Assembly: GCF_021869535.1 (NCBI RefSeq)
Contig: NW_026262690.1
Coordinates: 108,996,001 to 109,060,000, forward strand
DNA length: 64,000 nucleotides
Reading direction: 5' to 3'
From: Mytilus californianus
Lineage: Eukaryota
Below, one piece after another: positions 9,395-61,504 of this stretch; position 1 is the stretch's first letter, and the number at the start of each line of letters is the position of its first letter. Made by a program: the position numbers and the translations under genes. The notes beneath the pieces are model-generated. The model did no database searches and was not told the origin of the DNA. It saw only the letters and a list, made by a program, of their open reading frames with translations.

Positions 9395-9557
9395 TTACAC
9401 ATTGGCAATGTGTACGACATCATATGGTGAAAGATTGTCTCTTCTGACCAGAGTCAGATCCTGATAGGCTTGATGATCTAATTGGATTTCATTTTCATAA
9501 ACTGCTGAATTTCTTTGATTTGAATTTTCGTGACAATTCTTCAACATCGATTTTCGC
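9395..9557 (-). CDS. Terminal coding exon: cytoplasmic tail (Q)RKSMLKNCHENSNQRNSAVYENEIQLDHQAYQDLTLVRRDNLSPYDVVHIANV*
   Basis: Acceptor ttttatttttgacAG; phase-2 entry matches the TM exon; 53 open codons then TAA (followed by TAG); basic RK directly after the TM. Confidence 0.85.
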
Positions 9558-10813
9558 CTGTCAAAAATAAAATGTAAAAGTAATATTTTACATGAGAAGT
9601 AACATTTTAAATGCGTTTTTAAACCAAGATGGGAGTGAAATTTATATCTGATAGCAGTTAGAAATGATCAACAGCAATCCGTTGTTGATGATTGAACAAT
9701 TTTGCCATCCGATTCTTCATTTTCTAGATCAATTGTTAAAATTGCAAAAAGGGGAAACACACAGAAGTTGCCCTTAAAAACGAAAAGTCAAACGAAATCT
9801 GACAACGTTATAAGCCACAAACACAGAAACAAACAAACCACATGAAAAAAAAGAAGATAAACGACTAACAACGAATGCCAGTGGACGAAAAACGGACATC
9901 GGACGCAATTGATTACAATAGCTCACATTGACACTCTTTAAATATACATTCTTATAATACCTTAACTAATAAGTCTAGAAAAATGTATAGTTGTCAAATG
10001 AAAAATGATAACACAAATTAAATACACTGACTAAAGTGAACAGACAAAATATTAAATTATACGTTCTTAAAAGTTTGTTTGACATGTTTAAATTGAGCTT
10101 CGGAATCTTCTTTTCCCCTGATATTATTTAAATATCAATATACTAGTATACATACATAAATCACATATACATATTACAAGTCGAGGTATAAAGTTTGGAA
10201 TAGGATCTGACTACCTTTCAGTAGCAGATCAGTTCAACGCGGCTTTTTGTGATGCTTTATGTTTTATTATGTCTCTTTTGTTTTCATGGTTGTTGTATAT
10301 TCGTATTTTTTCTATTTTGACCTTGGTGTTGTAGTTTTTGTTTCGATATATTTGGTTTTTGGTTTTCCGTTCGAATATTCTGCCGCATTTTACCGGAAGT
10401 TCGTTCAGTTCATTCTTACTTTGTTTAATTATCAAAAAAATACAATAAGTTCATATTGTTTGTTTTACTTGCAGTACTTCAAAAGATGTGATCCCTTTCT
10501 TCTCTATCAACCAATAAGATAATGTCGATCCTATTTGAAATTTTAAAACAATACGCGGTATGCCAATAAACGGTTGTGACTTCTACAATACTGATTGTTT
10601 TATGAACAGTCTTTCTAAATGTGTACTTGTATATTATATTGGTTCCTTCGAAAAGAAACCTTAATTAAGAGAATGGCAACTTTAACATGAATGACGAGTT
10701 TTCAATCAAAACAAAATATTTTGCTAAGCAAATGTCATAATCTTTTTAAGTTATATCTAGCTTTGTGATACTACATATACATGGAATTTACACTCGACTT
10801 AATTAACACGTAC

Positions 10814-10889
10814 TGAATAAACAAAATGACAGCTGCAATGATAACTATCAATCCTACAATTCCAGCAACTACACCGATCAAGACAGTAT
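10814..10889 (-). CDS. Transmembrane exon (Y)TVLIGVVAGIVGLIVIIAAVILFI(Q)
   Basis: Acceptor ttattttgctattgcAG, donor GTACGT; 76 nt, phase 1 to 2; 24 uncharged, mostly hydrophobic codons. Confidence 0.9.
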
Positions 10890-12308
10890 CTGCAATAGCA
10901 AAATAAGAATCAGATGAAATGGAATTTGAAATATCTCCGCCATTAATACAACAATTATTCTATTATTCATTATCAAACCATATCATGCTAAACACATTAG
11001 AATAACACGCACACGCAGAAAGACGTGAGGTAACAATTTGTAATAAAATGAATTGACTGAGCAAATAGAAAGTATATCGGATCTATTGTCTTAGAAGTTT
11101 ACATTTTGTTAGGTTAACATAATCCAATATTTCTAGGTCAGTATTTTCTACAGTGATCGAGGGAATAAAAACGCATTTTTTTCTATCATTTTTAATAAAT
11201 ACTTACTAGTACTTCTTTTGTATCCATCTTCTTTTGAAACTGAAAAAAGTTTTGATATGAAACTATTTTTTATATATGAATAATAGTCCATCAGATATAT
11301 TTAGTTATGTCTATCAGTGCAATATTCTTAATTGAGAAAATTCTAATTATTGTGTGTTTCTATTTTCTCGGCAAGGATAATTTTTCCATACATGTAAGAA
11401 CAAGTACAAACAAAAACGTTGTATGCAATCAATGTATCTGTTTTATAGTCAAACAAGGAAATACCAAAAAAAAAATAAATAAATGGGAGATTTAGTACTA
11501 AAACAAAAAATACACAAAACGGTTTATAGACGCTGGTTTCCGACGGTATCCTATGATTAATACATTTCGTAGACGATCCTAGGACATATCGTTGTCTTAA
11601 GTGAGTTTTTTTTCAAAAGATTTTCAAGTTAAGATATGTGAAATTATTTATAGTAAAGCAAGGACATCAAAGTATCTCTATTAAGATATGTCATTTTCAG
11701 CCATACCAACACCACAATAATTATGCCGTATTTGACATTTAGTTATAAAAATCAGAAGATTAGGTATGATTGCCAATCAGACAACTCTGCATTAGAGAAC
11801 ACACGATATAAAAGTTTACAATTCTAGGTCACTATACGGCCTTCAACAATGAACCTTTTAGGTGATATCAGATAAGACACTGTCATAGCATTTAAATTTT
11901 TAGTTTGGCATATTATAAATATTTGTTATCCGTTAGATAAATTATCATGGAATTATCGTGAAAGGCTAAGATACATAACCTGTCTTACGATTCAAGCTGA
12001 AATTGTAAATGTATAATATATAGAGCTATTGCCACTGATTGTCACAAAAGCATACACGGAAGAATTAATTACGCTGCATACATGAATATGCATATGTATG
12101 ACGTTTTTGACTATTCATAAATATAGGTCTATATAAATGATTGTCGGTTGCTCTACCTAAGTTTCTAAAAATAGTATCAAAACATTTCTTAAAGTAAACT
12201 AAATGTACTTCCTATATATAATAAAGAAGAAAAAAATGCTTTTAAATAGTTATTACTAAGATTATTCATCAGACCATACATTCTGGGAACATAAGCGCAA
12301 AACAGATT

Positions 12309-12318
<10 letters not shown>

Positions 12319-12339
<21 letters not shown>

Positions 12340-12351
12340 GTGGGGGGGGGG
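12319..12351 (+). repeat. Poly-G tract (G22 T G10)
   Basis: Directly read; follows a T12 run. Confidence 0.95.
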
Positions 12352-12762: not shown

Positions 12763-12834
12763 ATGCTGTTATTTCTGTTGTTACTCCTGATGTAGTAGAT
12801 TCTTCCTGTGCATAAGTCAGATGAGTTGTTGAAT
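12763..12834 (-). CDS. Ser/Thr-rich stalk exon (D/Y)STTHLTYAQEESTTSGVTTEITA
   Basis: Acceptor ttttcaatactttAG, donor GTAAAT; 72 nt, phase 1/1; open frame that joins the TM exon in frame. Confidence 0.8.
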
Positions 12835-17467: not shown

Positions 17468-17641
17468 TAATCACCCCCAGTTTTTGGTGGGGTTCGTGTT
17501 GCTGAGTCTTTAGTTTTCTATGTTGTGTCTTGTGTACTGTTATTTGTCTGTTTGTCTGTTTTCTTTTCTAGCCATGGCGTTGTCAGTTTATTTTCGATCT
17601 ATGAATTTGACTGTTCCTTTGGTATCTTTCGCCCCTCTTTT
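17468..17641 (+). repeat. Solo copy of the Penelope-like tail (ATCACCCCCAGTTTTTGGTGGGGTTCGTGTTGCT...)
   Basis: Matches 54420-54597; further copies at about 24572-24740, 51715-51930 and 12310-12460, and inverted at about 47396-47605 and 59845-60020. Confidence 0.8.
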
Positions 17642-19075: not shown

Positions 19076-19851
19076 AGAACCGACTTAGGAGTACTTGCAA
19101 TTACTGAATGCTAGTTTAAAACCAATAACAACTAAATCATGTTCTTTTCGACTAAATAATAAAAACTGATACCGTGCATGGACGTCATAAAGATGTCACA
19201 CAAATTAGGAGAAAAGCATAGGGTTTGATGTAATGCCAACAAATAAATGTATAATTTCGATAGGATGAAGGACGATACGTTTAAATAACTGTATGATATA
19301 ACATATTTATGTTAGTTTTAATATATCAAAATCAAAATTAAAGTTTGAATTCTACCTATTAACATGTTCTTATTAACAATCACAGGATAATAAATAAATT
19401 TCTAGACAATGAAAAACATAAACAAAAACTAATCATCCAATGGAAATATCATAACATGAATTTCTAAAGATACATGATGCTGTCGAATCGATAAAAACAG
19501 AATGCACTGCTGTTCATAAGACGTTTTACATATACGACAATCAACGGAGGAGGTATGATAAGACCCATTTGTTTGCCTCTGATATAATCTTGACACTTAA
19601 GCGCAAAAGGTCGCTTGTAATCATGTCGCAATAACCACGTCTTAGTTTAGATATGTTCAAAATTGATATAAGCCAAGACCTTACAAATTTTTAATTACAT
19701 ACATCTGCGTCGTAAAGCAAAGTACATCTAGTAAATATGACAATAATATAAATGCCAACATTACAAAGAATGCTCAATTTTAGCGATTGGTATTGAATTA
19801 CGTAAATGAATATATGAACAATAATATTTCTGGAATCTGATGCGACTGTCA

Positions 19852-20052
19852 TACAAGTGAGAGGTTTAGCGCTATAAAACCAGGTTCAATCCACCATTTT
19901 CTACATTTGAATATGCCTGTACCAAGTCAGGAATATGACAGTTGTTGTCCATTCGTTTGATGTGTTTTATCATTTGATGTTGCCATTTGATTAGGGACTT
20001 TCCGTTTTGAATTTTCCTCGGAGTTCAGTATTTTTGTGATTTTACTTTTTTT
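19852..20052. repeat. Dispersed repeat family 2 (TGCGACTGTCATACAAGTGAGAGG...)
   Basis: Homologous copies at about 53150-53350 (same orientation) and 5838-5966 (inverted fragment). Confidence 0.85.
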
Positions 20053-20106: not shown

Positions 20107-20252
20107 AGGTACAATTTTCAAAATCGCTTGCTTGAAGACTTGACATTTGAACATTATTGCGATCCAAACAGTTTACTAATTCTTCTTTCAGTGATCTAGA
20201 TTTTAGCCAGGACCAAAATGGAAAGTTACAATCGTAGATCACATGAAGATAC
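20107..20252 (-). CDS. LRR C-terminal cap exon B: YLHVIYDCNFPFWSWLKSRSLKEELVNCLDRNNVQMSSLQASDFENCT
   Basis: Acceptor cttcaaacAG, donor GTAAGT; 146 nt, phase 2 to 1; open; 25 of 48 residues identical to exon 52082-52233 (hand count); first cap Cys replaced by Tyr. Confidence 0.85.
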
Positions 20253-23837: not shown

Positions 23838-23868
<31 letters not shown>

Positions 23869-24528: not shown

Positions 24529-25589
24529 GTCGATGTGGTAAAAACAAACATTCACATTTTAGATCTTGTTAATCACCACCAGTCTTTGGTGGGGATCCTG
24601 TTTTCTATGTTGTGTTTTGTGTATTTTTGTATGTATGTATGTATGTTTGTTTATCTTTTTCTTTTTTAGCCATGGTGTTGTCTGTTTATTTTCGACTTAT
24701 GAGTTTGAATGTCCCTTTAGTATCTTTCTACTCTCTCTTATTGAACTCAAATATATTTAGTACACAATAATATTTAAGTTTAATCATTAATGATAGTACT
24801 GTTACATACTCTGCTTCTAAATAATTTCTAGTTCGTACGTTCGTACGGTCTTTCTGTGCGAATGTTTGTTTGCTAGTATTTTGTTTTGCATAAAGTATGG
24901 GTAAAATTTATACATACACAATATTTAGCCATGGGAGATCTTGAAACGACCCTTGTCGTATTGTGGTTACACGATGACATTGCAAATATGTAGAAAAGAA
25001 AATGGTAATCTTTTTAATTTATGTTGTGCAAATGTGGTTGGTATTCAATTAATTTCTACTATTTGACATATTTTTCCTACCACTAAACCGATACGGCTCC
25101 TTTCCCGTGGACATCACTGTTTGTAGAAATACTTGGGATGTTGGTTAATTAAATCAAATCAATGTGTCTATAAATAGTTTGAAGTTCAAAAATATAAATA
25201 TTTTCGAAAATAATGACTGTTAAACCAAATGTATATGTTTGTTTTATGGAGACTTTGCTATTCTGTAAAGACCAATTTAATTTTGAAAACCTTATTGCCT
25301 TTTGATTTTCAAATATTTGTTCGAGAGCATACATTGTTAAATCTTTTATAAAATATGTTTAACACCAAACCCTATCTTAATTAATATTTTAGAAAATGAT
25401 ACTTTTTTATTTTTTTTCCAACCCGGTGCATATATCGATCTATTGCCAAATACTCTGTTCAGAAAGTATAAAACAAAATGTTTTGAAACTTTATTTGGAA
25501 TACTATTGGATGATTCTCTTTAAAAGTCGTTAATGTGAAACTTATTGCAGATCAGCAGGAAGATATGCTGATCGGATTCGGACTTCTAT

Positions 25590-33660: not shown

Positions 33661-35600
33661 TTCCCATACAATTGTTTGTCAAATGTCTGAATAGCATGAT
33701 CTTGTCCAAAAGACTTGGTCATGTCAAAGCATTTTTATGATAGTATATACTGTTGACAATAACTTGGTGGCTTCAAATCAATAATGGGTTGGTATGAAAC
33801 AACTGAAAATTATGGACTGACATCTGAATGAGTGCTATTGTACCCACTCCAGAAAGGAAGTTAGGGAGTGTTAGATGGTAGTGCAAAAGGTAGTTAAAAA
33901 ATACCTCTAGATAAAGATCTCACTATAACATATCCTGTGAATTTGTTCTTTCTGAAGCACAAAATGATGTTTTTCCATATGCATTATGAACTCTGGGTGA
34001 TTCTGTTTGCAATTTGGGTTTTGGAAAACAACACAATTCATAATGGACATGACATCCTCGGTCAGTGTCACAGATCTCTCGTTATCTTTTTTTTTTTCAG
34101 CTTAACCGGTTCAATAGAAGATTCATTCGTATTACTGACTTGAAAACTTCCAATGTCATTTAATGAAAGGTGTTTTTTCATCTATTGTTTCCGTATTCGA
34201 ATCAATGTTATCAGCACCTTCTTTCAAAAGACTCCACCCCACCAGAGAAACATTATACGAGACGTACATAGCATCTTGAATTCGCTCAATACTTGTTAGA
34301 TAGAGTCGCACTTCTCTGTACAAAGCACAAAATTCATTGGCATTTACTGTTTCAACAAGGTGTTTCGAACCAAACTCATGATACATTTGTAAAGCAAATC
34401 TTAAATGTAAAGCAGTAAAACTGTTTTTGGTCACAGAAACAATTGACTCAACAATTGCCAAGTATTTGTGCAATTTCTCTGGTGCCATTTCCTGATTATA
34501 GAACTGGCTGTATGCAGTATCATCCACTAACCATGAAATGAATTGCAATAAAGACGAAGGCATAGAATGAAATGAAGAAGGGAGAGACAATTCATCAGAA
34601 GTTGGGTTTTCTTCTGTGGAAATCTGTAAAGTGTCGATGTCTTTTCTTAGTATAGTTGCAGCGGAATGCAATATATGTTCCTTATTTGTGTCTATTACTG
34701 TTGACATTGATGTCTGCATCTCAGAAATTTTTAGGTCAGCATTTAATTGACTATCCCCAATAGTTATGTTTCTACTGAATATTATGTTAGATTTACCTTG
34801 ACATTGTTGTTGTTGTATGACAACTGAGTCTCTATGCAGTTTCCAAATAGAATATTTTCACTTAGAGTCAGTAGGAAAGAAAGATCTATATATTAATCAA
34901 GTAACGTTGTCACGAGGAATTATTTTTTTTCAAAATAAAATCTTTGTCAATAGCCGATATATCAATAGTAAAAGAATTATCGTGATCTGTGATTTCTGCT
35001 TCCAGGGAGTCAGATTTTTTTGTTTTTGTTTTTGTTTTTAGCAAATATTTTGTAATGCTATCAGAAATATATAGTGCATGAAGTTTAAAAGATGGATGAC
35101 AAACTATTTCTACTTTCAAATTATCGTCATTGCTTTCTGCCACGGCTAAAAATACTCTTAATACGCCCATCTGATTCAAACTTGCAGAGATTCAGATCTT
35201 TCTTAAATGTTTTGTTACAACAAATTATACAAGAACTCTAGTCGAATCTCTGACTTCTAGAACGCGTACAAACACCCGAATCTTGGGAAACACCAGTACG
35301 ATGATTGTCTGTCGTCAGGTTATAATCTTTCTCACTCTTAAAGGGAGACAATTATTATTACTGTAGCATGAACGTTGGTATACTGCCTGCATTTTTTTAA
35401 ATTCAAAACTATCAAATGAAACAAATTCATCTATAACCTTGATGTACACCTCATCCAATCGTTTGTGCATTGAAGATACAAAAGTCGACTTCCCTTCTCT
35501 AGAAAATTGACTCAAACTTTCAGCGGATGTTTTTGGCATATTATGCAATGCATGGAATTAACAACGTTCGTCTTTTCTTTGGACTTGAAGGAGCAAGTTT
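33661..35600 (-). pseudogene. Degenerate large transposase-like ORF (superfamily unassigned)
   Basis: Broken frames give YQRSCY, LHLRFALQMYHEFGSKHLVE, GADNIDSNTETIDEK/NTFH, PFWSGYN, SYQPIID and HAIQTFDKQLY, motifs in the order seen in a widespread invertebrate transposon-like protein family; stops and frameshifts; cut at about 33660 by a dispersed repeat. Confidence 0.65.
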
Positions 35601-46400: not shown

Positions 46401-47666
46401 ATGTATAAGATTAAACTACTTAATGAAAAGAAAACAATCTAATGAGAACTTGAAACAAAAAAAAAACAACAAAAAATCCAACCGAATTCAGATAATACTA
46501 TACGAGAAATCCATTAGTTCCCTTTATAATTATTTTTTTACTTTTCAAGTCGTGCAAAAAAATGTTTTGTCCCAGAATGCTCAAAACATAAACAAAATAA
46601 AACACATTACTAATATAATGATAGTAATTAAAGTAATTCTACAATATGCAATGCATTTTTTTTTATCTTCAATGTACTTAAATCTTTTATGGTTAATCAT
46701 AGTGACCTCACTGTTCATTCATCATAAAGTAGCATTCAAAGTTAAGGTATTGTAAACCACATGTAGGATGCTTATAAATATACTATATAAGTATCCATAA
46801 TAAATCAATTTAATTGCACATAAATATATAATTTATCACTGACTGTCCCAATATCTCTTGAAAGTTTAATTTTCGATACATTATACTAATAACGAAAATA
46901 TGTAACAAATTATTGTAAATTTGCAAGTGTGGATACTTCTAGTGAATACATTAGTCTAAAAAAATATTTAGTGTATTTATAAAGCAAACCCGAAAGTTCA
47001 GCATTTTGTCGTGCCGACATGTAAAATCCATATAAGAAACTTTTATTTATACAATGTACCGCAATGGAGTATACATTTCCTTACTATCATTATTAAAAGA
47101 CTATTAAGATTTAGTAGATTTGGTTTTCAGGCTCCGCAACTAAATAATTTTTAGATATATTCGGCCTACGTCCTCTTTAAGCAAAGTGTCTATAAAATCG
47201 GATCATTTAACATAAGATGAAGAAAACTATATTAATACATGTAAAAACAAAAACACCAAACAATAAAAACTTCTACAGAATGATTAACTACTTTTGTTTT
47301 TATTTGCTTGGTAATTTTATATGAAGATATTTTTTGGTAGGTTATAATATCTTGAAAAACCACCTTATCAATATCAAATAATTAAAAGAGAAGCAAAAGT
47401 TCCCGAAAGGATATTCAAACCCATTAGTCAAAAATATACCGACAACGCCATAGCAAAAAAGAAGTAAAAAGATAAAACAAAAACGTACAACTGTGCACAC
47501 AACACAACATTAAAACTAAAGACTGAGCACCACGAACCCTACCAAAACCAGTGGTATTCTTAGCTGCCGATGAAGGAAGGGTAATCAGATTCTGTTCTAC
47601 ATGTGGCACCAGCCCAACAGACTGTTTTTATATCTTCAAATGCAAACTCTGCAGTTATTTTGCATA

Positions 47667-48592
47667 CGTTCCAGACCATATGAGTATTTGGACCGTACTC
47701 GTACGGTCTAGTACGAGATGGACCATACATGTATTTGGACCATATGGGTTTATTTTAGACAAACATTTATCAAAAAAGTTTTATTGAGTTTTACAAATTA
47801 ATATCATTACCATTAGATGAATAAAAGGAATAAGTTAACATTTAATCAATTGAAACTAAATAATTTTGTATTTAATTGTATTTAATTGTCTGTCTAAATC
47901 TTATTTTGACACTTTCGCCCTAGGTGACAATTGCTGCCACAAGGAACATCCGATTTCTTACATTCACATATTTTGTTCATGCATGTTCCTTTGCATTTGC
48001 ATCTCTTGCTTGTAAGAGGCAAGCTTGCTTGTTTTGTGCCAGCATGCAATGCAATTCCTTCTGTTTTCCAATGTGCAGTTTCAATTTTGCGTGTCAAAAG
48101 TTCTATATAGCCCATAACATAACAAGAGTTCAATATGCCAAATTCACATAATAGTTTGTACAAACTTGCATCCTTACCAATAATATCATCAACCCTACAT
48201 CTCCCGATGCTCTTCTCTCAGTAACAAAGCTACCTTTTTCAATCTTTGCATTTTTTTCGACACTTTTTAATAATATTTTCTTATTGTAATTTGAACAGAT
48301 TTTTTATAATTTCTGTCCAGTATCACCGTATTCTGTCGTGATATACAGGAGATTAACTTGTAGATAGTTAAAACTTTAAGTTTTTATTCCAATTATAATT
48401 GAACTTTTTATATTAATTCGAGATTTCAGTTATGTTGATCTGTAATATACATTTGTATCTAATAAACTTGACCAATTTTTTATAATCTGGCAGACCATAC
48501 GCGTACAGTCCAACCGTATGCGTATTTTAAAAAAGTACGCATACGGTCAGGACCGTACGCGTACGGTCCAAATATTCATATGGTCTGGAACA
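47667..48592 (-). mobile_element. Ginger2/TDD-like DNA transposon deletion derivative
   Basis: TIRs of ~40 bp (GTTCCAGACCATATGARTATTTGGACCGTACKCGTACGGTC); 4-bp TSD CATA at 47663-66 and 48593-96; right end ...ACA, left end CGT (TGT mutated); residual frame ends in CKCKGTCMNKICECKKSDVPCGSNCHLGRKCQNK, the Cys-rich tail of KRBA2/Ginger2-type integrases. Confidence 0.7.
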
Positions 48593-48997
48593 CATATACA
48601 TGTTCAAATATAGGGATGTTTTATGATTGAAACAAATTTCAACGACAGTTAAGCTGATGTGGATAAAGCTTATTGTACGGCATTAATCAATTAAAAAAAT
48701 AATGCAGTATAGTCTGCAATAAAACGCAAATAAATGCAAAATGTGAAAACACTGCAGACGAGAAATTTAACGATCTATTTGATAACTATACAATTTACGA
48801 AAAACACATTTGGCAGTTATGACAAACTGTAAGAATCAGATGCAAATGGCCTAACTCAATATATCGATACGAAGCACAAAACAAACATAAAACATATCAA
48901 CGACAAAAGAGTTACTTAAAAGCTAGTTCAAAACCAATTTCAACTAATACATAAATAATGATATCCAAAGTTTGAGGATCTTTTTGTATAGACGTAC

Positions 48998-49048
48998 CAG
49001 AGTAGATATTTTCATCCGAGTTGGGCATGTCAATATGGTATATTATTT
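48998..49048 (-). CDS. Candidate short linker exon after EGF: (E)IIYHIDMPNSDENIYS(G)
   Basis: Acceptor tactttaaAG (alternative AG gives upper bound 49060), donor GTACGT; phase 1/1 and open, but the preceding intron is only 57 nt and no domain is recognised. Confidence 0.3.
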
Positions 49049-49105
49049 CTTTAAAGTATCCTGTATATATGCCATGAACACGTACATTTTTATTTTCCTC
49101 CTTAC

Positions 49106-49216
49106 CTGTACATGTATCACCGGTCCAGTTACCAATGCATGAACAAACTAAATCACCATAACTGTTTTGACTACAAAATCCACCGTTTGAACAATAGTCA
49201 GGATGACAGGAGTAGT
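49106..49216 (-). CDS. EGF-like domain exon (D)YSCHPDYCSNGGFCSQNSYGDLVCSCIGNWTGDTCT
   Basis: Six Cys in EGF spacing with NGG and GxxC; acceptor ttttctttttaaAG, donor GTAAGG; 111 nt, symmetric phase 1/1, typical of EGF module exons. Confidence 0.9.
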
Positions 49217-52081
49217 CTTTAAAAAGAAAAACTTTTCTTATCCAGATTTTAACATGAAGTTCTAATTTCTTCATTTATGTAAAATATGAAAATGAAAAGC
49301 AGCAAAACTGTTTAAATTCATTATTGTTCCGAAATTGATGATAACATTTGTATGACAATTACTATTTTAGATAATTTAATTTAATGACAACACTGCCCTA
49401 GGTTATAAAAAGTGTTCAGAAAAAGAGGATCGCTGATCCGCAAATACTAACGACAGGAACAAATGACAGATCTTCTCAGTTGGTAACTGGTTTATTAAGG
49501 AAAAGTAACTTTATCTAACGAACTTCTTGACAAAATTATATTTTCATAAAACCTTCACAACCTTACAAAAAGTATTTTCGAACCTATTGGGCATGCATAC
49601 CATTGACATTGAAGAAAAACAAGTAAGCAGGGTTTAATGATGCTAAGATTGTTGATTAGGTTCCAGGAGCTGGACTACATATTCCAAAAGAAAACGACAT
49701 AGTTTTAAAAGGTGCAATATGCGAGTTGAATATTACCATGTTGCACAATGTATAATATCCACACAGGGAACGCAGTTTATTGATGATGGATATGATACAA
49801 ATGTTGATTGGAACAAGAACTCCTGAAATATATGTGATATATTCGATAATTCATGGACAGTGAACGTATGATGAACAATTGAGATTTAGCACTGCACAAC
49901 GCCCCAAATCAAATCGGGCTGTTATAAGCCAAAAATTAGAGTCGTTTCACATTACAACAGATACGCGTGATAAGGGTCAAAATTATGATAGTTATTCTTA
50001 TATAATGGGTCACGTTCCTTTCGTCGGTCCTCAGGACAACAAATTTTTCAGCCAAAAGTACATGCAAACCAGACGACCTAAACGAAAGTGATTCCATGTT
50101 AAACTTTGAACGACATTAAAATGCCAAAACATACAGGCAAGTTATCAATCTGTTTCACCGAACTGATATAAAAAATTCCGAAATATATTTACTTGATTAC
50201 CCACTTTTATCAAGTGCATCGCCTTAATTGTCTGTCTTTAAATTTAGTTTTCTTTTAGATCTTTCATATCCTCGTTTATCGCAAATTTAAAACAAATGAA
50301 CGGTGCATATGTGAGGCCTAGTGTAAATCGAATAGACAAAGAGGCCGGGCGTGTTTCTAGTTCTTATAAATCTAGGTCAATCCTAATTTCACGAATCTCC
50401 TATTAGGTTTGGTTAGAGATGGAAAAGGGAGCAATCAATTTACAGAAAGAAATAATTTATCTTACACTCGAAATAGAGGTTGGTAGGTGAAAGGGAACGA
50501 TCAACTCACTGCCCCCCTCAGGCACATATATCTTCAACGGACAACGTTGACACATCGTAGGGTCCCCGATATGCTATTTCAAATTTTTAAATTTGGAGTT
50601 GTTTATCTGACTGGAAGTTTCAACAATATCAAGGGCTTATCGGTATCCACTATTTCCTAATTATGGATATAGACTTGCAGTATTACCCGCTATTAACAAT
50701 CTGCATCTTTCTACTGTATATTGGTAGTTTTCAACACCATTAGTTCGTTTATAAATTAAAGTAACTCTCGCATTTGTTGGGTGTTATTTTTTTCCCAGCA
50801 TTATCACTTTGATCGGTTATTTAACTTTTGAAGTGAAGACAAAACGATGTTATTTTTCGCTAGATATTTGTATTAAGTTAGCAAAATCGAATTGTTCAGA
50901 CATTAATCGTAGCTTGGCTACAATAAATATACAGATAAGAATACGAAAAGAGTCATGTGTTCGAACATTATTAAGAAGAACAGTGAGGGTAGTCAGGCAT
51001 TTCTCAATTGCATCACTCCTACTAATAGATATTGTTTCAGGGGAAAAAGTAAAAAAATAAATTCAGCTATGTTGATAACTTATCGAAAGTTCAACAGGCT
51101 AAAATTTATATTTTCGCCTTTAAGAGTCGATACCCAATTATCTATTCATATCAAGAAAAAAAAAATGGTCGCTACACTTTATACAATTTCAACAATATAA
51201 ATGCTTTTTCCCATTTGAAGCAACAGGCAGCAACACTGTTTTGAAACCTACAAACCAATGAAAATCTAACAAACTAAAACGCATGCAAAGTGATTGCATA
51301 TAAAAATAAAAGTTTTCATGAAAGTTTTAATTATTGCTGTTCTACATGTAAGTCGAAAGTTTTAGTTTTGAACATAAAATAAAACTATTCCAGTAAAAGA
51401 TAGTTTCTTTATCTAACGGTTTAATTGAGCTATCTTCACCGTCTTTGTGTCATTTATAACATATCTTTGTATATAGCCGCATCTGAATGACATATTTATT
51501 TCGTGTAAGCACTTTGATAAAGTAGCAAGTCACCTACAGGTATGTTTAAAAAAGTTTAGTCATAGATTTTCGTTTGTTTCAACGTGAATAATATATAGGT
51601 GTAATCTTCATCTCTATAACATTATACTTATAATAGTACAATTGTATGCTAGTAAATGTCATGGTTTATTTATGACCATATCGATGTTTTTTCGTCATGC
51701 AATGTCCTTACAATAGCTACACGACGGGAGACAAATTGGGAGCAGGACCAGCTAACCTTTCAGGAGCATTTGCTATCACCCAAAGTTTTGGTTGTTGGGT
51801 TTGTTGGGAATTGTGTTGCTCAGTCTTAATTTTGTTGTATTTTGTATACTGTTGTTTGTCTTTCTGATCGTTTTTCTTGTTTTTGCCATGCCATTGTGTT
51901 AGTTTTTCATTTTGCTAGTGTTTGCTTCTCTTTTGAAAATATGAATAACTACTGTACTTAGTACGTGTTTATTACACAACATATTCCAAATTAGCAATAA
52001 GGATTGAATCAAGCAGATTAATTCAGACTACAACCTTTTATTATCATTGTTTTTTCAATAAGAAGTAATGTAAAAGCTTAC

Positions 52082-52233
52082 CGTCACAATTATCAAAATC
52101 ACTTGCTTGAAGACTGTATAAATCTGTATTATTCCGATCCAAACATTTTATGATATATATGATATGCCCGACACTCTTTGACTTTGACCAGGACCAAAAG
52201 GCAACGTTACAACCACATACTAAATCCAGAATC
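52082..52233 (-). CDS. LRR C-terminal cap exon A: ILDLVCGCNVAFWSWSKSKSVGHIIYIIKCLDRNNTDLYSLQASDFDNCD
   Basis: Acceptor tttcaatttcaaacAG, donor GTAAGC; 152 nt, phase 2 to 1; CxC...W...C...C pattern of LRR-CT caps; joins the EGF exon in frame. Confidence 0.88.
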
Positions 52234-52857
52234 CTGTTTGAAATTGAAAGTTTTTGATGTGCATAAATTCTGATTCGTGTACTTGTTTAATTGTAGTTTT
52301 GTAAAGGCAATATGACAGTTATTAGGAAGAAGAAATCAACCTTCCCAAAAAGTTATAATAAAAGGCAGCAATAAAAAATAGAGATTTAGAAAAAGCACAT
52401 TAACGCTGGAATGGTATCTGATATTCCAATTACGATTCACGGTAATATTTCACTGCACCTTGTTAGTCGGTCATTAAATCTTTACTCATTTCACAGTGCC
52501 TTGAGTACAATATTTGTGATAGGAACATAAAATCCATTTGTTTTTGTTTTTTCTTTTATTTTAGAGATTGTAAGTCCTATAATCATCGTTATTGGAAATT
52601 TTGTTTAACTGCAAAACAATTCATAAAAATTTCAACAATTAACTGTTGCTTAAGTTCAAATATTATAAAACATCTAGATATAAAAAAATAAATGATAGGA
52701 CTGGTTAAACGGTGATCGTTTTGATAGATAGGAATGATTGCATTGGTGATACTACAAAAGCTGTCCTGTGTATTTTATATTCAAATTGCAAAATAATTGA
52801 ACAATTTGAATTGATGAGGATTTTTAAAAACACGGTACCTCAATGAAATAAACATAG

Positions 52858-53034
52858 TAGTTATAGAAGGACTGGTCATTATCGCGATACATGGACTGCC
52901 CGTAGGACAGTGTTATTGACTGCAACAACGATAATGACCTCGCCTACGGCTCGGTCATTATCGTTGTCTTAGTCAATACAACCGTCCTGTGGGCAGTCTA
53001 TATATCACGATAATTACCAGTTTCTCAATAACTA
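52858..53034. repeat. Fold-back inverted repeat (~80-bp arms)
   Basis: Arms pair imperfectly from TAGTTAT/ATAACTA inward to ACAACGATAATGACC/GGTCATTATCGTTGT around the loop TCGCCTACGGCTC. Confidence 0.88.
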
Positions 53035-53149
53035 TTATATAATTACTGCACTCATACTTTTGTTTATACCGCTCACTATATTTCGATGGCTAATTCAAAA
53101 CAAAACAGATAGCAGGAAGACACATTCTAATGCAATACATAGTAAATTA

Positions 53150-53350
53150 TCCGACTGGCATACAAGTGAGAGGTTTATCTAGTTATAAAACAAGGTTTAA
53201 TCCAACATTTTCTGCATAAGAAAATGCCTGTACCAATTCAGGAATATGACAGTTGTTGTCCATTAGTTTCATGTGTTTGAGCGTTTGATTTTGCCATTTG
53301 CTTAGGGACTTTACGTTAAGGATTTTCCATGGAGTTTAGTATTTTTGTTA
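53150..53350. repeat. Dispersed repeat family 2 copy
   Basis: Aligns with 19852-20052. Confidence 0.8.
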
Positions 53351-53814
53351 TTAAATTTTGATACAGAATTCAATGAACAATAATATATATATATATACCA
53401 AATTAAATAATTTTTTAAAACATTTTGGGAATTCTAAAATAACAAAGTGATTTTGCTTGAAGTTTTTAAGAAAGCAATAATGAGTTGAATGACATGTCCT
53501 AACTTGTTTAATTATTTTGTATATATTATTAACCTAGGAAGATTAGTTTGAAATGCAAATATTTGACACCACCCTTCTAGTGTCCGGTATCATTTGTTTT
53601 AATTGAATTTATGGATCCGTATACCTGCTGTATAAGTTTGAAGTGGTGAATATAGTATGTTATTTACTGTCTAATCGATCTGTAACGGTAATACTTCAAA
53701 TTAAGAGTTTACACAATCATGAGGGGCAAAACTACATCAATGTTAAAGGACACACATAGATCTTTTTTTCTAGCTTTCTGTAACTGCACAAGTTTTTCAA
53801 TCTTGTAATATGCA

Positions 53815-53990
53815 TTTTATAATGATATGTTTTTCTCGTTGCATTGTCGTTTGTTTTTTTGTTGTACTCCAGTATTTCTGTTGTTTCGTTGTTTTCCTCT
53901 TATAGTTGATGTGTTTCCCTCAGTTCTAGTTTGTAACCCAGATTTTTTTTCTCTTAATCGATTTATGACTTTTGAACAGCAGTATACTTC
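53815..53990. repeat. Dispersed repeat family 1 fragment, inverted
   Basis: Reverse complement of GCAACAGTAGTATAC...AAATCCGGGTTACAAAC...GAGGGAAACACATC. Confidence 0.75.
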
Positions 53991-54129
53991 TAATGTCTTT
54001 ATTTGCAATATTTCATTCCCAAGTTTATAAATTTAGTATCTTATGGACGGAGTTTTAAAGAGTAAATATATCGGGATGCTAGCTCAATCATCAAGTTTCA
54101 TCATACATTTTAAGCGTGTTTTGGTAAGT

Positions 54130-54597
54130 CCATAACAACGCTCAATATGCTCACAAGTAAGATATTAAACCAAGAGTTCCAAATGGTGAAGTTGAAATCA
54201 TCGCTTCGTAAATTCTACGGAATCCATCACGAGTTGGTTGACCGTTATGGAATATCCGTTTCGTAGATGATATCAGATATGTTCCTTATGTCGGAATTAC
54301 AATTCCGTTCCCTTTTCAAGAATGTGACCTACCGAATTAGACTATTTCCCAGTTTTGTAATAACATGAGCAACACGACGGGTGCCACATGTAGAGCAGGA
54401 TCTGCTTACCCTTCCGGAACACCTGAGTTCACCCCCAGTTTTTGGTGGGATTCGTGTTGCTTAGTTCTTAGTTTTCGATGTTGTGTCTTGTGTATTATTA
54501 TTTGTCTTTAGTCTTTTTCTTTTTTAGCCATTGCGTTGTCAGTTTATATTCGATCTATGAGTTTGACTGTCCCTCCGGTATCTTTTGCTCCTCTTTT
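54130..54597 (+). mobile_element. 3' end of a Penelope-like (probably Naiad-type) RT element plus its non-coding tail
   Basis: Frame reads LNMLTSKILNQEFQMVKLKSSLRKFYGIHHELVDRYGISVS*MISDMF, followed by the tail GAGCAGGATCTGCTTACCCTTCCGG...CACCCCCAGTTTTTGGTGGG that also occurs alone elsewhere in the window. Confidence 0.65.
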
Positions 54598-54748
54598 GAA
54601 TATGCTGATATCAGAATTACAGACGAGAGAAGAAAACAGAGATTTTATTTTACCTTATACTGAATTAACAAGTATTTAACAATATAGTAATAAATCATAC
54701 AATATAGAAAATGCATAATAAATCATAAAAAATAAAATATGTACTTAC

Positions 54749-54820
54749 AAAAATTCTTAGTTGATGTTATGTTCAAATGTGTCATTCTTGACAAAAGTCA
54801 AATTGTTTCCACTCAGGGAT
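54749..54820 (-). pseudogene. 72-nt LRR exon with in-frame stop: SLSGNNLTFVKNDTFEHNIN*EF(L)
   Basis: Strong splice sites (tttttttctgcAG / GTAAGT), phase 2/2, xLxxNxLxxVxxxTF consensus; TAA falls at a conserved Leu position, one base from TTA. Confidence 0.8.
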
Positions 54821-55589
54821 CTGCAGAAAAAAATGTGAACAATCCTTTGATATCATTGTCTCTCCAAAGTATGTTATTGATTGTAACGTTCAGCAAGTTA
54901 TAATTCAAGAATAGATCATCGTATTTAATTTTGATTTGTTCTTTGACTTTTTGATGCCAAAACACGAATCTAAGAAGAACACTTGTACTTGATAATTGGG
55001 TCACTGCAAGAAACTTTTTTAAAGGTTGAAAATATACTGCACAGCCCTATATTTTGACCTTTGAAAAAATTAGTAGTGCATATGAACTTCCCTTTCTACG
55101 ATATAATTTTTTTTTTGAAAACTTCACAGTAAAAGTGGTACAGTTTGAGCCGTAAAAAGAGTTCCTATGGGAAATTGGATTGTCGATATATATAGAAATG
55201 CAACCTCTAAGGTTGGTGAAAAAAGAGTACACACAGAATTTCACCAAATCTGGTTTATCTCAGAGATTTTAATGAAATTAAATAAAATATGAAGTGTTAT
55301 AAATTTTCAAGAAGATTGAGAAAATCCTGGACCTGTACTATGATGACTCAGCATAAATTCACAATTTACAGTATGCATAGTTTTAGCCGTAATAGGAGTT
55401 CCTATGGGAAATTGCATTGTCGATATTTACAGAAATGCAACATAAAAACAGCTTATATTCATGATTCATGGTCTTTTTTATTGATATTTTTTCGTGAAAC
55501 AATCTTCAAAGATAAATTTTCTAAATATACTGCCGAAATTTGTCCGATGGAAACTTACTTAAAAGAAATAAAATATAAACGGTATTAAC

Positions 55590-56100: not shown

Positions 56101-56394
56101 AATTAAAAGCAAACTGAATACTATTGTTAAATACATATGATAGATAGATAGTTTATTTTTCATAAAACCATGAAATACAAAGTTACAGAAAGATTAAAAA
56201 CAATCGTACAAAAAATAAATAAATACATAAATAAAAATAAAAAAAAAAATAAATACAAATATAAGAATACAAAGTAGGTGAATCATAAAATTGAGATTGG
56301 AAATGGGAATGTAATATACATGTTTAAAGAAATAGTTTTAGTGTTTAAATATGTTAAAACTATGGTTGAGAAGAAGGAGTAATTTTACTGTTGA

Positions 56395-58320: not shown

Positions 58321-60389
58321 TTTTCAAATGTCTTCAGAGAATGTTAGACATTTAGTTATGGAAGTAAAAGTAACCATCAAAAAGGGATATAATGATTTAG
58401 AAGAACATACTGTACTATATAAAATTGGATTCTAAAATAAACAGAACCAGAAAAAAAAAAGGTTGCCCGTTTTGTAAATGTTGGTACTTTTAAAATTGCA
58501 AGACGAATTTCTGGTGTTTAAACAGCCAAATCAAAATGTCACCTTTCAGCGATCATCATAACCTTTACAGATGCGGTCATGTTAAGACCTCTATTTTGTT
58601 CTAAGTGCAGACAAACATGTGCATATGGAAACAGTTTACGGCATTGATGAGACATGATACAGAATTGAAATGTGTAATTTCAGAAAATTGAAGAATTTGA
58701 GTTTCATTTTTCTTGAAACAGAAAGTGTCAAAAATATACAAACTTTAGAAAATTCTCCGAGAAGTTCCTCCAAGTATTATTTGCATTGTGTTGCATTACA
58801 TGAACAATAGATCAACAGTAATCATCAGCGCAAGAAAGATGATTTATACCGAAGGAAAACAATGAACGGTACTTGTTTATAACTGTTCTATATGTATGAC
58901 TTAATTGATTCTAGATTTGATTGTACTCACAGTACGTTTTCCGGAATAAACATGCAATTGTTTCCAAAATGTTATGATGAATATTTGGAGTATATGGGTG
59001 AATGTACTGTTCACAGAAAATAAAGTAAAAACGTCTAAAGTAAAACACAACAAACGACATTCATACTACAACACTTTGCATGTACAGACAGTATGCGTTA
59101 ATATAAGGCGTAGGCACCCTTTTTTTAATTATCTATAGTCAATATTTAACAACAATTCAAACAGAATTAAAACCATTATTGTGTTGTTCCTGTCATACAT
59201 TTATTTATAAAATAACTATTCAAATAATTCAAATATAGTAATATATCCAAGGAGTGACCGAGCATTACATTTATAATTCACGAATGGGCGTAGAGCATGA
59301 TTTTTTTTTATTAGTGTTGTTCTGTCGCGAGTTTTTCCATATCTAAATCTGGGAGTAGTTATTTATTTTTATTACATTGATGATAAACCTCTTAGAAAAA
59401 AAGTAGAATCTGAGGAATAATGTCTTTTTCTACGCATACTCATTTTTTTTATGCAATGTAAGCGGCAACGTCTTGACAACATCAATAGTTGTATGACGCC
59501 AGAGATGGAAATTATCAGATTTATTTCACTTGTGAAATTATCGTGTAAATATTTTTATTTCACCGGGAAATCACGATGATTAATAATAGTCTATGTGACA
59601 ATTGATAGAAATAACAATGATTAGTCTCCAAGTGGATAATTGACAAATTGACTATGCGGTATGGACTTTGCTTATCATTGAAGGCCGTATAGTGATCTAT
59701 AATTGTAAATGTCCATGTGATTATATCTCTGGTGGAGGCGTACATCCCCTTCTTATTCTTTGATTTATAATAATTTGGTATTATTGTCAGCTAATTTATC
59801 TTCATTATATGATTTTCTTCACATGCAAGAAAGATGAAATTAAGAAATAAACTGACAAGGCCATGACTAAAAAAAAATAAATAAAAGACCAACAGCAGTA
59901 TACAAAACGCAACATAGAAAACTGAATACTGAGCAAGATGAACCCGAACAAACACTGGAGTGATATCCGGTGCTCCGGAAAGGTTATCAGATCCTGCTTC
60001 ACATGTGGCATCCGTAATGTTGACATTGTACATAGAGTCCGTTGGTAAAATATACACCAATAAGAAAATGATCAGATTTTAAAATGTAGTTCAAACATTA
60101 TCAATCTTTTTTTGACCACTTGTGTTGAATCAACGTTAAACATCAGAACCGTAAACGGATGTGTTCTTATCATTATTGTTTAATAAAATAGTTAACACTA
60201 ACTGAGTCACCTATGTTCTAACTATTGAATAAAAGAACTCTTGATATTAACAATTTATAATAGTAAACATAATCTGCCACGGATTGACGTTACAATTTTT
60301 CATTTCTTCTTCTCACTTATGACTTTGAATGTCCCTTTTGTATCTTTCGCCTCTATTCTAGATTAAATATTATAATAATTCAAACCTAC

Positions 60390-60461
60390 AGGACTCGGAG
60401 TGCTTGTAGGTCTTGGAATGTTCCTTTCTGCAGTGTAGTTATTCTATTGTTGTCCAATTGG
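60390..60461 (-). CDS. LRR exon QLDNNRITTLQKGTFQDLQALRV(L)
   Basis: Acceptor tattttgttttAG, donor GTAGGT; 72 nt, phase 2/2; full 24-aa typical-class LRR consensus. Confidence 0.92.
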
Positions 60462-61054
60462 CTAAAACAAAATAATAGGTAGAAATGTACATAAAATCAT
60501 TCAATATTGTTTTATGGTCCTGTTACCGCCGTATTTTAATCTTTATTTTAATTTTAATCATAGCTTTGAGCAAACGGTTTAACAGGACAAAACTTTTTAC
60601 TGCGTTAGTTATAGCCGTGGGTACAGTCAAAACTATTATCTTCAAAACGTATACACGTTTGTATGAGACAGTTATTTGGGTCAAATATAATTTCAAAACT
60701 GTTGAATTTTTTGCCGGAAGAAATATGTCAAACAAACATGAAAGATGAAATAACAACAGATAAACTACAGTTCAAATAATCATATAACTATTATCGAGCC
60801 AATTTGTCTTCTTCATCATATGTTCATTGAATCAAAGTTTACAATCAACATGGTCTTACGAAAGCGTTCATTATATTTATCAAATAGTCAAACAGTTGAA
60901 CGACCAGAAAGATGTTAGACATGAAAATAACACTTTATATTTTATTTGTCCGAAGTATTCACGGAAATTACTTTCATCAAGAACACTCAATGTTGGGTAT
61001 TTGAAAGCCAAGAATGTATAAGAACCTAGACTGTTGAAGAGATGTATGACCAAG

Positions 61055-61300
61055 AAAGGCAACAGTAGTATATAGTCATGAATCGATTAAGCCAAAAGAA
61101 AACAACAACCTAAAACAAATCCGGGTTACAAACTAAATCTGAGGAAAAACATCAACTATTAGAGGAAAAATAAAAAAACACAAACACCCCCCCCCCCCCC
61201 TCCAAAAAAACAAACAACAGAAACCCTGAACTGCTACAAAAAACAAACGCCAACATATACAGAAACGGACTATTCGATAACAACTATCATTTTCCTGGAC
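61055..61300. repeat. Dispersed repeat family 1 fragment in the intron between the two intact LRR exons
   Basis: AAAGGCAACAGTAGTAT...AAATCCGGGTTACAAACTAAA. Confidence 0.7.
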
Positions 61301-61432
61301 AATATGAACCAAATGATAATAGGCAAATTGATCAAAGTTTAAGTCCAACTTTGCCTTTGAGCAACTTACTGGGTCACTGATTGACTTTATATTGTTGCTT
61401 CGATATAAGATAATGTAATAATGTAAACATAC

Positions 61433-61504
61433 AGTCTTGTGAGTGCTGATAGGTCTTTAAATGTTGCTTGATGTAGAGAAAGTATTCTATTGTTGTCCAA
61501 ATAT
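61433..61504 (-). CDS. LRR exon YLDNNRILSLHQATFKDLSALTR(L)
   Basis: Acceptor ttacttttgtttcAG, donor GTATGT; 72 nt, phase 2/2; full 24-aa LRR consensus; 52/72 nt identical to 60390-60461. Confidence 0.92.

What the first reader, a model, noticed from the sequence alone, without database searches (positions are those of the whole stretch)
9395..61504. Hidden 52-kb LRR-EGF-TM receptor locus with an immunoreceptor-like tail
Seen: nine small GT-AG exons on the minus strand assemble in frame into LRR(n) - LRR-CT - EGF - S/T stalk - TM - 53-aa tail. Only the EGF piece is visible in the ORF track. Knowledge: extracellular LRR plus Tyr-motif tail without a TIR domain is a pattern-recognition or cell-contact receptor layout; LRR+EGF+TM loosely recalls vasorin but there is no FN3 here. 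Inference: an uncharacterised bivalve LRR receptor family, possibly immune. The 5' exons are missing from the window.
Basis: partly seen in the sequence, partly recalled or inferred. Interest (0 to 1): 0.85.

Follow-up and report, generated by a model that had tools for sequence, protein, structure and literature searches.

The report
Mussel LRR-EGF gene, unproven membrane tail
The window holds the back part of a real, expressed mussel gene for a leucine-rich-repeat plus EGF surface-type protein of a mussel-only family, but its link to the membrane anchor and tyrosine tail 36 kb away is not shown, a second overlooked gene remnant lies in between, and this copy carries a premature stop.

Summary
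The exons are real. I find eight minus-strand GT-AG exons that join in frame, not nine: three 72-nt LRR exons, a four-cysteine C-cap exon, an EGF exon, a stalk, a TM and a 53-aa tail.

RNA contigs show the C-cap-to-EGF splice at exactly the predicted borders. They also show that the EGF donor is used and that the transcript continues for 193 nt further.

- The last LRR exon has an in-frame TAA. The M. edulis orthologue has Leu there.
- The supposed 36-kb intron holds a dead LRR exon (24988-24920) and a second open C-cap exon (20252-20107). These are remains of an older paralogous unit, and the stalk, TM and tail exons belong to its type (M. edulis CAG2211084).
- The family already sits in databases as Mytilus predicted proteins, auto-named slit-like or Nogo-receptor-like.

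The EGF-to-stalk join is phase-compatible and plausible, because no signal-peptide or N-cap exon exists downstream. It is not demonstrated.

The tail motifs are not conserved in the one paralogue with a tail, and there is no canonical ITAM.

Verdict: an ordinary, lineage-specific capped-LRR gene. It may have fused to a neighbour's membrane exons, and this allele may be null. The same scan found other one-repeat-per-exon LRR genes elsewhere in this genome.

The parts
61433..61504 (-). LRR exon, 72 nt, phase 2/2. Corresponds to the fourth LRR of the M. edulis orthologue.
   Evidence: Sequence with cag|...|gtatgt borders. Pfam LRR_8 E 9e-5 for the single repeat. Family LRR profile E 5e-7. 71% identical to XP_071161759 residues 107-130. 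Syntenic with L002 31308-31379.
60390..60461 (-). LRR exon, 72 nt, phase 2/2.
   Evidence: Pfam LRR_8 E 6e-5. Family profile E 4.5e-11. 74% identical to the orthologue's next repeat.
54749..54820 (-). Last LRR exon, 72 nt. It carries the family signature GNNLTFVKNDTFEHN and an in-frame TAA at 54759-54757, at a framework Leu position.
   Evidence: Sequence. Family profile E 7e-10. 87.5% identical to the orthologue, which has TTG (Leu) at that codon. Strand-specific RNA reads fall in its bin, but they are not specific to this copy.
52082..52233 (-). C-terminal cap exon A (LRRCT-like), 152 nt, four Cys, phase 2 to phase 1.
   Evidence: Sequence. Best 67% identity to Mytilus family proteins. An RNA contig of run X1 covers 52082-52232 with 2 mismatches and is joined directly to the EGF exon. 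A contig of run X2 also stops at 52082.
49106..49216 (-). EGF exon, 111 nt, phase 1/1.
   Evidence: Sequence. Pfam EGF_2 at 24 bits against a cut-off of 22.1. 81-84% identical to the M. californianus XP_052106642/3 EGF. The X1 contig covers exactly 49106-49216 with 0 mismatches and continues 193 nt beyond the donor without reading into the intron.
24920..24988 (-). Decayed LRR exon copy (relic of unit B). The AG acceptor is lost (ac) and NN is replaced by CH. The gtatgt donor is kept.
   Evidence: tblastn E 5e-4 to the LRR exon at 60461. Sequence. Family LRR profile E 7e-5.
20107..20252 (-). Second C-cap exon (unit B), 146 nt, open frame, same phases as cap A. The first Cys of the CxC pair is replaced by Tyr.
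   Evidence: tblastn E 1e-16 to 1e-21 with family proteins. Sequence with cag|...|gtaagt borders. 69% nt identity to cap A with no flanking similarity, so the duplication is old. Chance of 48 open codons is 0.04.
12763..12834 (-). Ser/Thr-rich stalk exon, 72 nt, phase 1/1.
   Evidence: Sequence with ttag|...|gtaaat borders. In frame after either the EGF exon or cap B. No homologue found and no RNA evidence obtained.
10814..10889 (-). Transmembrane exon, 76 nt, phase 1 to phase 2.
   Evidence: Hydropathy 3.2 over 21 residues. Sequence. 52-57% identical to the TM of M. edulis CAG2211084.
9395..9557 (-). Last coding exon. It encodes a 53-aa cytoplasmic tail that starts with basic residues, holds three Tyr (YEN, YQDL, SPYDVV), and ends with a TAA stop at 9397-9395.
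   Evidence: Sequence. 35% identity over 26 residues to the CAG2211084 tail, E 5e-4. Runs X16 and X1 hold 79% and 34% of the sampled words of 9250-9560. Chance of 53 open codons is 0.03.

Best explanation
The window carries the 3' part of an expressed gene of a Mytilus-restricted family of small capped leucine-rich-repeat proteins. The family layout is signal peptide, N-cap, 24-residue LRRs each on its own 72-nt phase-2 exon, a divergent four-cysteine C-cap, and usually one or more EGF modules. The gene here is the syntenic orthologue of M. edulis XP_071161758/9.

Shown:
- The three LRR exons, cap exon A and the EGF exon exist.
- Cap A is spliced to the EGF exon.
- The EGF donor is spliced onward.

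Inferred:
- The onward splice goes to the stalk, TM and tail exons 36-40 kb downstream. This would give a type I membrane protein with an LRR-EGF ectodomain, a short O-glycosylatable stalk and a 53-aa tyrosine-bearing tail.
- Those three exons are the surviving 3' end of an older neighbouring paralogue (unit B, of the LRR - cap - TM - tail type). Its own LRR array has decayed to one dead exon, and it has no signal-peptide or N-cap exon in the window. If the exons are still used, they must be used by the upstream gene.

As in other capped-LRR ectodomains, the concave LRR face would be the ligand-binding surface. The ligand and any signalling are unknown.

The reference haplotype has a nonsense codon in the last LRR exon. 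This allele therefore makes a truncated product, or a nonsense-mediated-decay target, unless that 72-nt exon is skipped. Skipping would keep the frame.
For: Exon anatomy and a single frame over 790 nt.

LRR census:
- The three LRR exons and one relic are the only four significant LRR hits in the window, all on the minus strand.

Family and orthology:
- Family proteins come from M. edulis, coruscus, californianus and galloprovincialis.
- The window is collinear with the M. edulis locus L002 from 64.0 kb to 31.8 kb.
- The last four exons correspond one to one.

RNA:
- A 501-nt X1 contig lies on 49106-49216 and 52082-52232 only, ending exactly at the exon borders.
- It has 193 nt beyond the EGF donor and 46 nt before cap A.
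- Contigs of all three contig runs give no depth in the intron bins 49351-50950, 51351-51750 and 52351-52750.
- X6 raw stranded reads fall only in the orientation expected for minus-strand RNA.
- An X2 contig, from another study and organism label, also stops at 52082.

Support for the downstream join:
- Phases match.
- The TM and tail are homologous to a family member.
- No N-cap or signal-peptide hit occurs anywhere in the window; the best E is 0.66.
- Only a dead LRR exon lies upstream of cap B.
- The tail exon is held by the same two runs, X1 and X16, that show the cap A to EGF joint.
- The TM and tail frames are open, at chances of 0.2 and 0.03.
Against: - The EGF-to-stalk junction itself was never seen. 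The single read-laying run could not reach it, and the loose end at 49106 was not printed.
- Cap B keeps an open frame and good splice sites. It is equally in phase with the stalk exon and with the LRR exons.
- No annotated family member in the searched length range combines EGF with a TM. All EGF-bearing models end soon after the EGF, and the one TM-bearing member has no EGF.
- The M. edulis orthologue has no EGF exon at the syntenic place, and its RefSeq models end by read-through after the cap.
- The nonsense codon and a dN/dS of 0.65 against the orthologue fit a decaying gene.
- RNA depth is very low, 3.7 for the specific contig.
Confidence: 0.55

Rival explanations
1. Two units, not one receptor. 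The LRR / cap A / EGF gene ends in an unrecognised 3' exon and encodes a secreted protein, like the annotated EGF-bearing family members. The stalk, TM and tail exons are instead joined to cap B. That could happen as an alternative 3' cassette spliced from the upstream LRR exons (LRR exon to cap B is in phase), or as the rump of a separate gene.
For: - A second C-cap exon has an open frame and canonical sites at 20252-20107.
- It is in frame with the LRR exons and with the stalk exon.
- M. edulis CAG2211084 has exactly LRR - cap - TM - tail without an EGF.
- In M. edulis an EGF-type model (CAG2211083) and this TM-type model have consecutive accessions on one contig.
- Every EGF-bearing family model ends just after the EGF.
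Against: - No signal-peptide or N-cap exon lies anywhere in the window, and only one dead LRR exon lies upstream of cap B.
- Cap B has lost the first cap cysteine.
- The EGF donor is demonstrably spliced to at least 193 nt of exon sequence rather than read through.
- No homologue of the paralogues' post-EGF C-termini is present in the window.
Confidence: 0.3
2. Transcribed pseudogene or null allele. The locus is decaying in this lineage or haplotype, and no full-length protein is made. The RNA seen is residual transcription.
For: - An in-frame TAA sits in a constitutive, family-conserved LRR exon, where the orthologue has Leu.
- dN/dS against the orthologue is 0.65, and exon identity (82.5%) is only slightly above that of alignable introns at 70-81%.
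- The orthologue itself has lost the EGF exon.
- No database protein closer than about 70-87% per exon was found for this copy.
- RNA depth is very low.
Against: - All other exons keep open frames and canonical splice sites.
- The stop is a single codon in a 72-nt symmetric exon, and skipping that exon keeps the frame.
- Mussel genes are highly polymorphic, so the stop may be confined to the reference haplotype. The state of that codon in RNA or in other individuals could not be read.
- High dN/dS is also usual for ligand-facing LRR residues.
Confidence: 0.35
3. One reading: an immune pattern-recognition or contact receptor that signals through ITIM/ITAM-like phosphotyrosine motifs in the tail.
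For: - The tail holds YEN, YQDL and SPYDVV, the last fitting the ITIM consensus.
- All three together occur in 2% of composition-preserving shuffles.
- The LRR ectodomain fold resembles binding scaffolds such as VLR and GPIb-alpha.
Against: - Each motif alone is common by chance: 18%, 34% and 12%.
- There is no canonical ITAM.
- In the only homologous tail found, the first Tyr is Val, the second motif is YQIS, and the protein ends before the third.
- YxxL/V is also a plain endocytosis signal.
- There are no expression data by tissue or challenge.
- The link of the tail to this ectodomain is unproven.
Confidence: 0.1

Closest known systems
Mytilus predicted 'slit homolog-like' / 'reticulon-4 receptor-like' small LRR-EGF proteins (M. 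edulis XP_071161758/9; M. californianus XP_052106642/3; M. coruscus CAC5402791-3). All are uncharacterised.
   Same: - Same exon plan, one LRR per 72-nt exon.
- Same signatures: GNNLTFVKNDTFEHN in the last repeat, the LDLVCDCN..FWSW and SDFDNC cap, and the CxPDYCSNGGxCSQNSYGDL EGF.
- The M. edulis gene is syntenic with the window.
   Different: - The window copy has a nonsense codon in the last LRR exon.
- It keeps an EGF exon that the M. edulis orthologue lacks.
- Its EGF donor is spliced onward, whereas the annotated models stop right after the cap or the EGF.
M. edulis CAG2211084.1 (LRR - cap - TM - tail family member)
   Same: Homologous C-cap, TM (52-57% identity) and membrane-proximal tail (35% over 26 residues). 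TM and tail lie on separate exons.
   Different: It has no EGF and no separate Ser/Thr stalk exon. Its tail is shorter and has one Tyr. Its own LRR array is intact, with at least five exons, whereas in the window only a dead LRR exon precedes cap B.
Vasorin (Slit-like 2)
   Same: Order N-cap - LRRs - C-cap - EGF - TM in a type I protein (my own knowledge of the family).
   Different: Vasorin has a fibronectin type III domain between the EGF and the TM. None exists here: the chain goes EGF - 24-residue stalk - TM. No specific sequence relation was found.
Nogo receptor (RTN4R), 5T4/TPBG, GPIb-alpha, LGR4/5 ectodomains, lamprey/hagfish VLRs
   Same: Capped LRR solenoid fold. A model of family member XP_052106643 aligns over about 285-300 columns, TM-score 0.6-0.75. 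The sequence search points to the same proteins. GPIb-alpha also has a mucin-like stalk before its TM (my own knowledge).
   Different: These are generic fold relatives at 21-30% identity. None has the EGF module after the cap. RTN4R is GPI-anchored, and VLRs are somatically assembled. There is no sign of such assembly here.

Membership tests
Capped extracellular LRR proteins (N-cap, LRRs, C-cap) | Tandem 24-residue LxxLxLxxNxL repeats | tested here: met
   Pfam LRR_8 at E 6e-5 and 9e-5 for single-repeat exons, below the cut-off only because each piece is one repeat. Family LRR profile E 5e-7 to 5e-11. The orthologue scores LRR_8 at E 5e-43.
Capped extracellular LRR proteins (N-cap, LRRs, C-cap) | Cysteine-rich C-terminal cap (LRRCT) | tested here: inconclusive
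   The four-Cys CxC...C...C pattern follows the last repeat directly. Pfam LRRCT does not hit the exon or any family member. The predicted fold of a family member aligns with the Nogo receptor from cap to cap (TM 0.70), but pLDDT in the cap is only 67-87.
Capped extracellular LRR proteins (N-cap, LRRs, C-cap) | Signal peptide and N-terminal cap (LRRNT) | not testable with these tools
   The 5' exons lie beyond base 64000. No hit of a family N-terminal profile occurs in the window. The M. edulis orthologue has them, with Pfam LRRNT at E 0.0025, below threshold.
Mytilus slit-like LRR-EGF family | Family signatures in the last LRR, the cap and the EGF, plus synteny with an annotated member | tested here: met
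   Per-exon identity to family proteins is 59-88%. The window is collinear with the M. edulis locus.
Vasorin / Slit-like 2 | Fibronectin type III domain between the EGF and the TM | tested here: not met
   No FN3 hit on any exon piece. The in-frame chain has only a 24-residue stalk between the EGF and the TM.
Slit | Four LRR domains, 6-9 EGF, laminin G, C-terminal cystine knot | tested here: not met
   There is one LRR domain and one EGF. Family members are 190-380 aa. The database names 'slit homolog-like' are automatic.
ITIM/ITAM-bearing immunoreceptors | ITIM consensus (S/I/V/L)xYxx(I/V/L) | tested here: met
   One match, SPYDVV. Such a match arises in 18% of shuffles of the tail.
ITIM/ITAM-bearing immunoreceptors | Canonical ITAM: YxxL/I, 6-12 residues, YxxL/I | tested here: not met
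   The second motif is YDVV. A regex for the canonical form finds none.
ITIM/ITAM-bearing immunoreceptors | Motif tyrosines conserved in relatives | tested here: not met
   In CAG2211084 the YEN position is VEN, YQDL is YQIS, and the third motif is absent. Only one comparator was available.
ITIM/ITAM-bearing immunoreceptors | Tyrosine phosphorylation and SH2-phosphatase or kinase recruitment | not testable with these tools
   This needs experiments.

The most novel reading that the evidence does not exclude
After the downstream paralogue lost its own LRR array and 5' end, the upstream LRR-EGF gene captured that paralogue's stalk, TM and tail exons by long-range splicing. This would create an LRR-EGF-TM architecture that no annotated family member has. 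It may come with a choice between two C-cap cassettes (cap A plus EGF, or cap B), giving different ectodomains on one anchor. The nonsense codon would then be a segregating null allele of the kind common in mussel presence/absence-variable gene families.
Probability: 0.2. Interest if true: 0.55.

Novelty: new member of a known kind. Interest (0 to 1): 0.3.

Why it matters
On its own it matters little. It is one more lineage-specific, fast-evolving LRR gene in a mussel genome that has many of them, and its relatives are already in the databases as unstudied predictions.

It would gain interest if the EGF exon really splices to the neighbour's TM and tail exons. That would be a clean example of a secreted-type binding protein turned into a membrane receptor by exon capture from a decaying paralogue.

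It would also gain interest if the stop codon proves to be a segregating null allele in a family that might take part in recognition.

For annotation, the useful result is the corrected exon map. It includes the second cap exon and the LRR relic, and it warns against stitching distant in-phase exons without junction reads.

Tried and rejected
- **Naive motif scans.** Scans for LRR motifs in stop-free segments showed no strand excess: 100 hits on the minus strand against 104 on the plus strand. The repeats are split across phase-2 introns. The exons appeared only once borders and phase were used.
- **Tail relatives.** A region-limited word search with the CAG2211084 tail returned only itself.
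- **Protein of the 501-nt RNA contig.** A search with the EGF open frame found four known family proteins and no Logan product.
- **Paralogue C-termini.** The post-EGF C-termini of paralogues have no counterpart in the window. The apparent 'stalk plus start of TM' at the end of M. coruscus CAC5402791 is a plain terminal exon with a stop.
- **Recent duplication.** Self-comparison shows only the cap exon is shared between the two units, at 69% identity. Other matches are dispersed repeats.
- **N-cap or signal-peptide exon for unit B.** None was found.
- **Literature.** No paper on this family was found.
- **Not done.** I did not hand a stitched protein to the search tools, because it has no reference and I did not type long sequences. 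The state of the TAA codon in RNA, and whether that exon is included in the specific transcript, could not be read.
Full report
**What is in the sequence**

The window is AT-rich (about 31% G+C) eukaryotic DNA with no N runs.

Simple LRR motif scans of open segments showed no excess on either strand. Each repeat is split by a phase-2 intron. A border-aware scan then gave a second perfect 72-nt LRR exon, 60461-60390.

The remaining exons were read from the sequence:
- a third 72-nt LRR exon, 54820-54749
- a 152-nt four-cysteine cap exon, 52233-52082
- the EGF exon, 49216-49106
- a Ser/Thr-rich 72-nt exon, 12834-12763
- a 76-nt TM exon, 10889-10814

All have AG acceptors behind pyrimidine tracts, and all but the last have GT donors. 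Joined, the 790 nt read in one frame to the TAA at 9397-9395.

That makes eight exons, not nine, and the frame is not clean. The third LRR exon has a TAA at 54759-54757, at the position of a framework leucine.

A profile built from 54 family repeats finds just four significant LRR hits in all six frames of the window. All are on the minus strand: the three exons, and a relic at 24988-24920.

**What family it is**

A HMMER search of 1.84 billion representatives with the 50-aa cap gave ten hits. The eight strongest (E 1e-9 to 8e-6) are all short Mytilus proteins. Seven carry M. edulis, M. coruscus or M. californianus names, clusters include M. galloprovincialis members, and one comes from a Logan assembly. 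The names are 'slit homolog-like', 'SLIT2', 'RTN4R' or uncharacterised.

A second search widened the census to about twenty Mytilus members and found only weak generic LRR hits outside mussels.

The family plan is:
- signal peptide and N-cap
- 24-residue LRRs
- a last repeat with the signature GNNLTFVKNDTFEHN
- a cap reading LDLVCDCN..FWSW ... SDFDNC
- one to three EGF modules

The window's exons carry these signatures.

Pfam gives LRR_8 and sub-threshold LRRNT for family members, but never LRRCT. An AlphaFold model of a member (mean pLDDT 80) matches the Nogo receptor, LGR5, 5T4, a hagfish VLR and GPIb-alpha from cap to cap, at TM 0.6-0.75. The sequence search of the PDB points to the same class.

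I found no paper on the family. Other agents of this scan reported several one-repeat-per-exon LRR genes elsewhere in this genome. I did not test those reports.

**The orthologue**

M. edulis XP_071161758/9 (241 and 232 aa) is the closest protein: 71%, 74% and 87.5% identity to the three LRR exons and about 70% to the cap.

Its locus (L002) is collinear with the window from about 64.0 kb down to 31.8 kb, at 70-81% nucleotide identity. Its last four exons correspond one to one with the window's. Three more exons (signal peptide plus N-cap, and two LRRs) lie upstream.

Three differences matter:
- M. edulis has TTG (Leu) where the window has TAA.
- M. edulis has no EGF exon in the syntenic interval, which is 0.9 kb there against 3 kb here.
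- Both RefSeq isoforms end by reading through the cap donor.

Across 121 aligned codons, exon identity is 82.5%, dS is 0.27 and dN/dS is 0.65. Constraint is weak. That fits either a fast-evolving binding surface or decay.

tblastn with the family proteins found a second cap exon at 20252-20107 (E down to 1e-21). It lies inside the supposed 36-kb intron.

It has a good acceptor and a gtaagt donor, the same phases as cap A, and 48 open codons (chance 0.04). The first cysteine of the CxC pair is Tyr. It is 69% identical to cap A with no similarity in the flanks, so the duplication is old.

About 4.7 kb upstream of it lies an LRR exon copy. That copy has lost its AG acceptor and the two asparagines of the repeat's NN motif (CH here).

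One family member, M. edulis CAG2211084.1, has the layout LRRs - cap - TM - tail with no EGF. Its TM and membrane-proximal tail are homologous to the window's. It carries the accession next to an EGF-type model on the same contig.

So the window holds two units:
- A: LRRs, cap A, EGF
- B: a dead LRR, cap B, stalk, TM, tail

Unit B has no signal-peptide or N-cap exon anywhere in the window; the best profile E is 0.66.

**RNA**

I put it on 48951-54950.

- A 501-nt contig of run X1 lies on 49106-49216 (0 mismatches) and 52082-52232 (2 mismatches) and nowhere else on the stretch. This is the predicted cap A to EGF splice, to the base.
- The contig has 193 nt beyond the EGF donor that do not continue into the intron. 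The donor is therefore used, and at least 193 nt of further exon sequence lie below 48951.
- The contig also has 46 nt before cap A.
- A contig of X2, from another study and another organism label, also stops at 52082.
- Run X16 shows a joint about five bases off the same splice.
- Contigs of all three contig runs give no depth in the intron bins 49351-50950, 51351-51750 and 52351-52750, so these runs behave as RNA.
- Raw stranded reads of X6 fall on the exon bins only in the orientation expected for a minus-strand RNA, at very low depth.
- Reads on the stop-bearing exon's bin are not specific to this copy, because that exon is conserved among paralogues.

I could not read the codon at 54757-54759 in RNA. 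I could not tell whether that exon is in the specific transcript.

Runs X16 and X1 also hold 79% and 34% of the sampled words of the tail region.

**How I weigh the join**

The 193 nt would equal stalk (72) plus TM (76) plus 45 nt of tail, but contig ends are arbitrary, so this is not evidence.

- The phases match.
- The downstream exons keep open frames and good splice sites.
- Unit B has no 5' end of its own.
- The same two libraries hold both parts.

Against it:
- The junction was not seen.
- Cap B is equally in phase with the stalk exon and with the LRR exons.
- No annotated member combines an EGF with a TM.
- The EGF-type relatives end right after the EGF.

I put the join at a little over one half.

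**The tail**

The tail has 53 residues. It starts RK after the TM and has three Tyr, in YEN, YQDL and SPYDVV.

In shuffles of the same residues:
- an ITIM-type match arises in 18%
- YxN arises in 34%
- two YxxL/I/V arise in 12%
- all three together arise in 2%

There is no canonical ITAM.

In the one homologous tail, the first Tyr is Val, the second motif is YQIS, and the protein ends before the third.

The immunoreceptor reading is therefore a motif-level guess.

**Verdict**

This is a real, expressed, lineage-specific capped-LRR-EGF gene. It has a premature stop in the reference copy and lies next to the remains of a membrane-anchored paralogue. The immune-signalling claim is weak.

Noticed in passing
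window 53149-53352 and 54148-54618: Dispersed repeats inside the gene's introns. They show thousand-fold depth on both strands in all four runs and have copies at 19840-20041, 17471-17641 and 24573-24745, as well as in the M. edulis loci. They look like abundant, transcribed short mobile elements.
   Followed up: partly
window 34159-35548, minus strand: Three consecutive open frames of 233, 89 and 77 aa in the large intron, with no Pfam match. They may be the remains of a mobile element's gene or an unrecognised intronless gene.
   Followed up: partly
window 47894-48163, minus strand: An 89-aa open frame with a weak Tesmin/TSO1 CXC cysteine-rich hit (E 0.029), just downstream of the EGF exon.
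   Followed up: no
L002 36811-38936 versus window 46859-51090: The M. edulis orthologous interval is about 0.9 kb where the window has 3 kb, and it lacks the EGF exon. The 3' structure of this gene differs between mussel species.
   Followed up: partly
L001 7010-65486 (M. edulis CAJPWZ010001254.1): The CAG2211084 model starts with a Met inside an LRR, and at least one more LRR exon lies upstream of it. The model is 5'-truncated, so that paralogous TM-type unit may also depend on upstream exons.
   Followed up: partly
Mobile-element insertion may have taken part in the decay of unit B.
   Followed up: no
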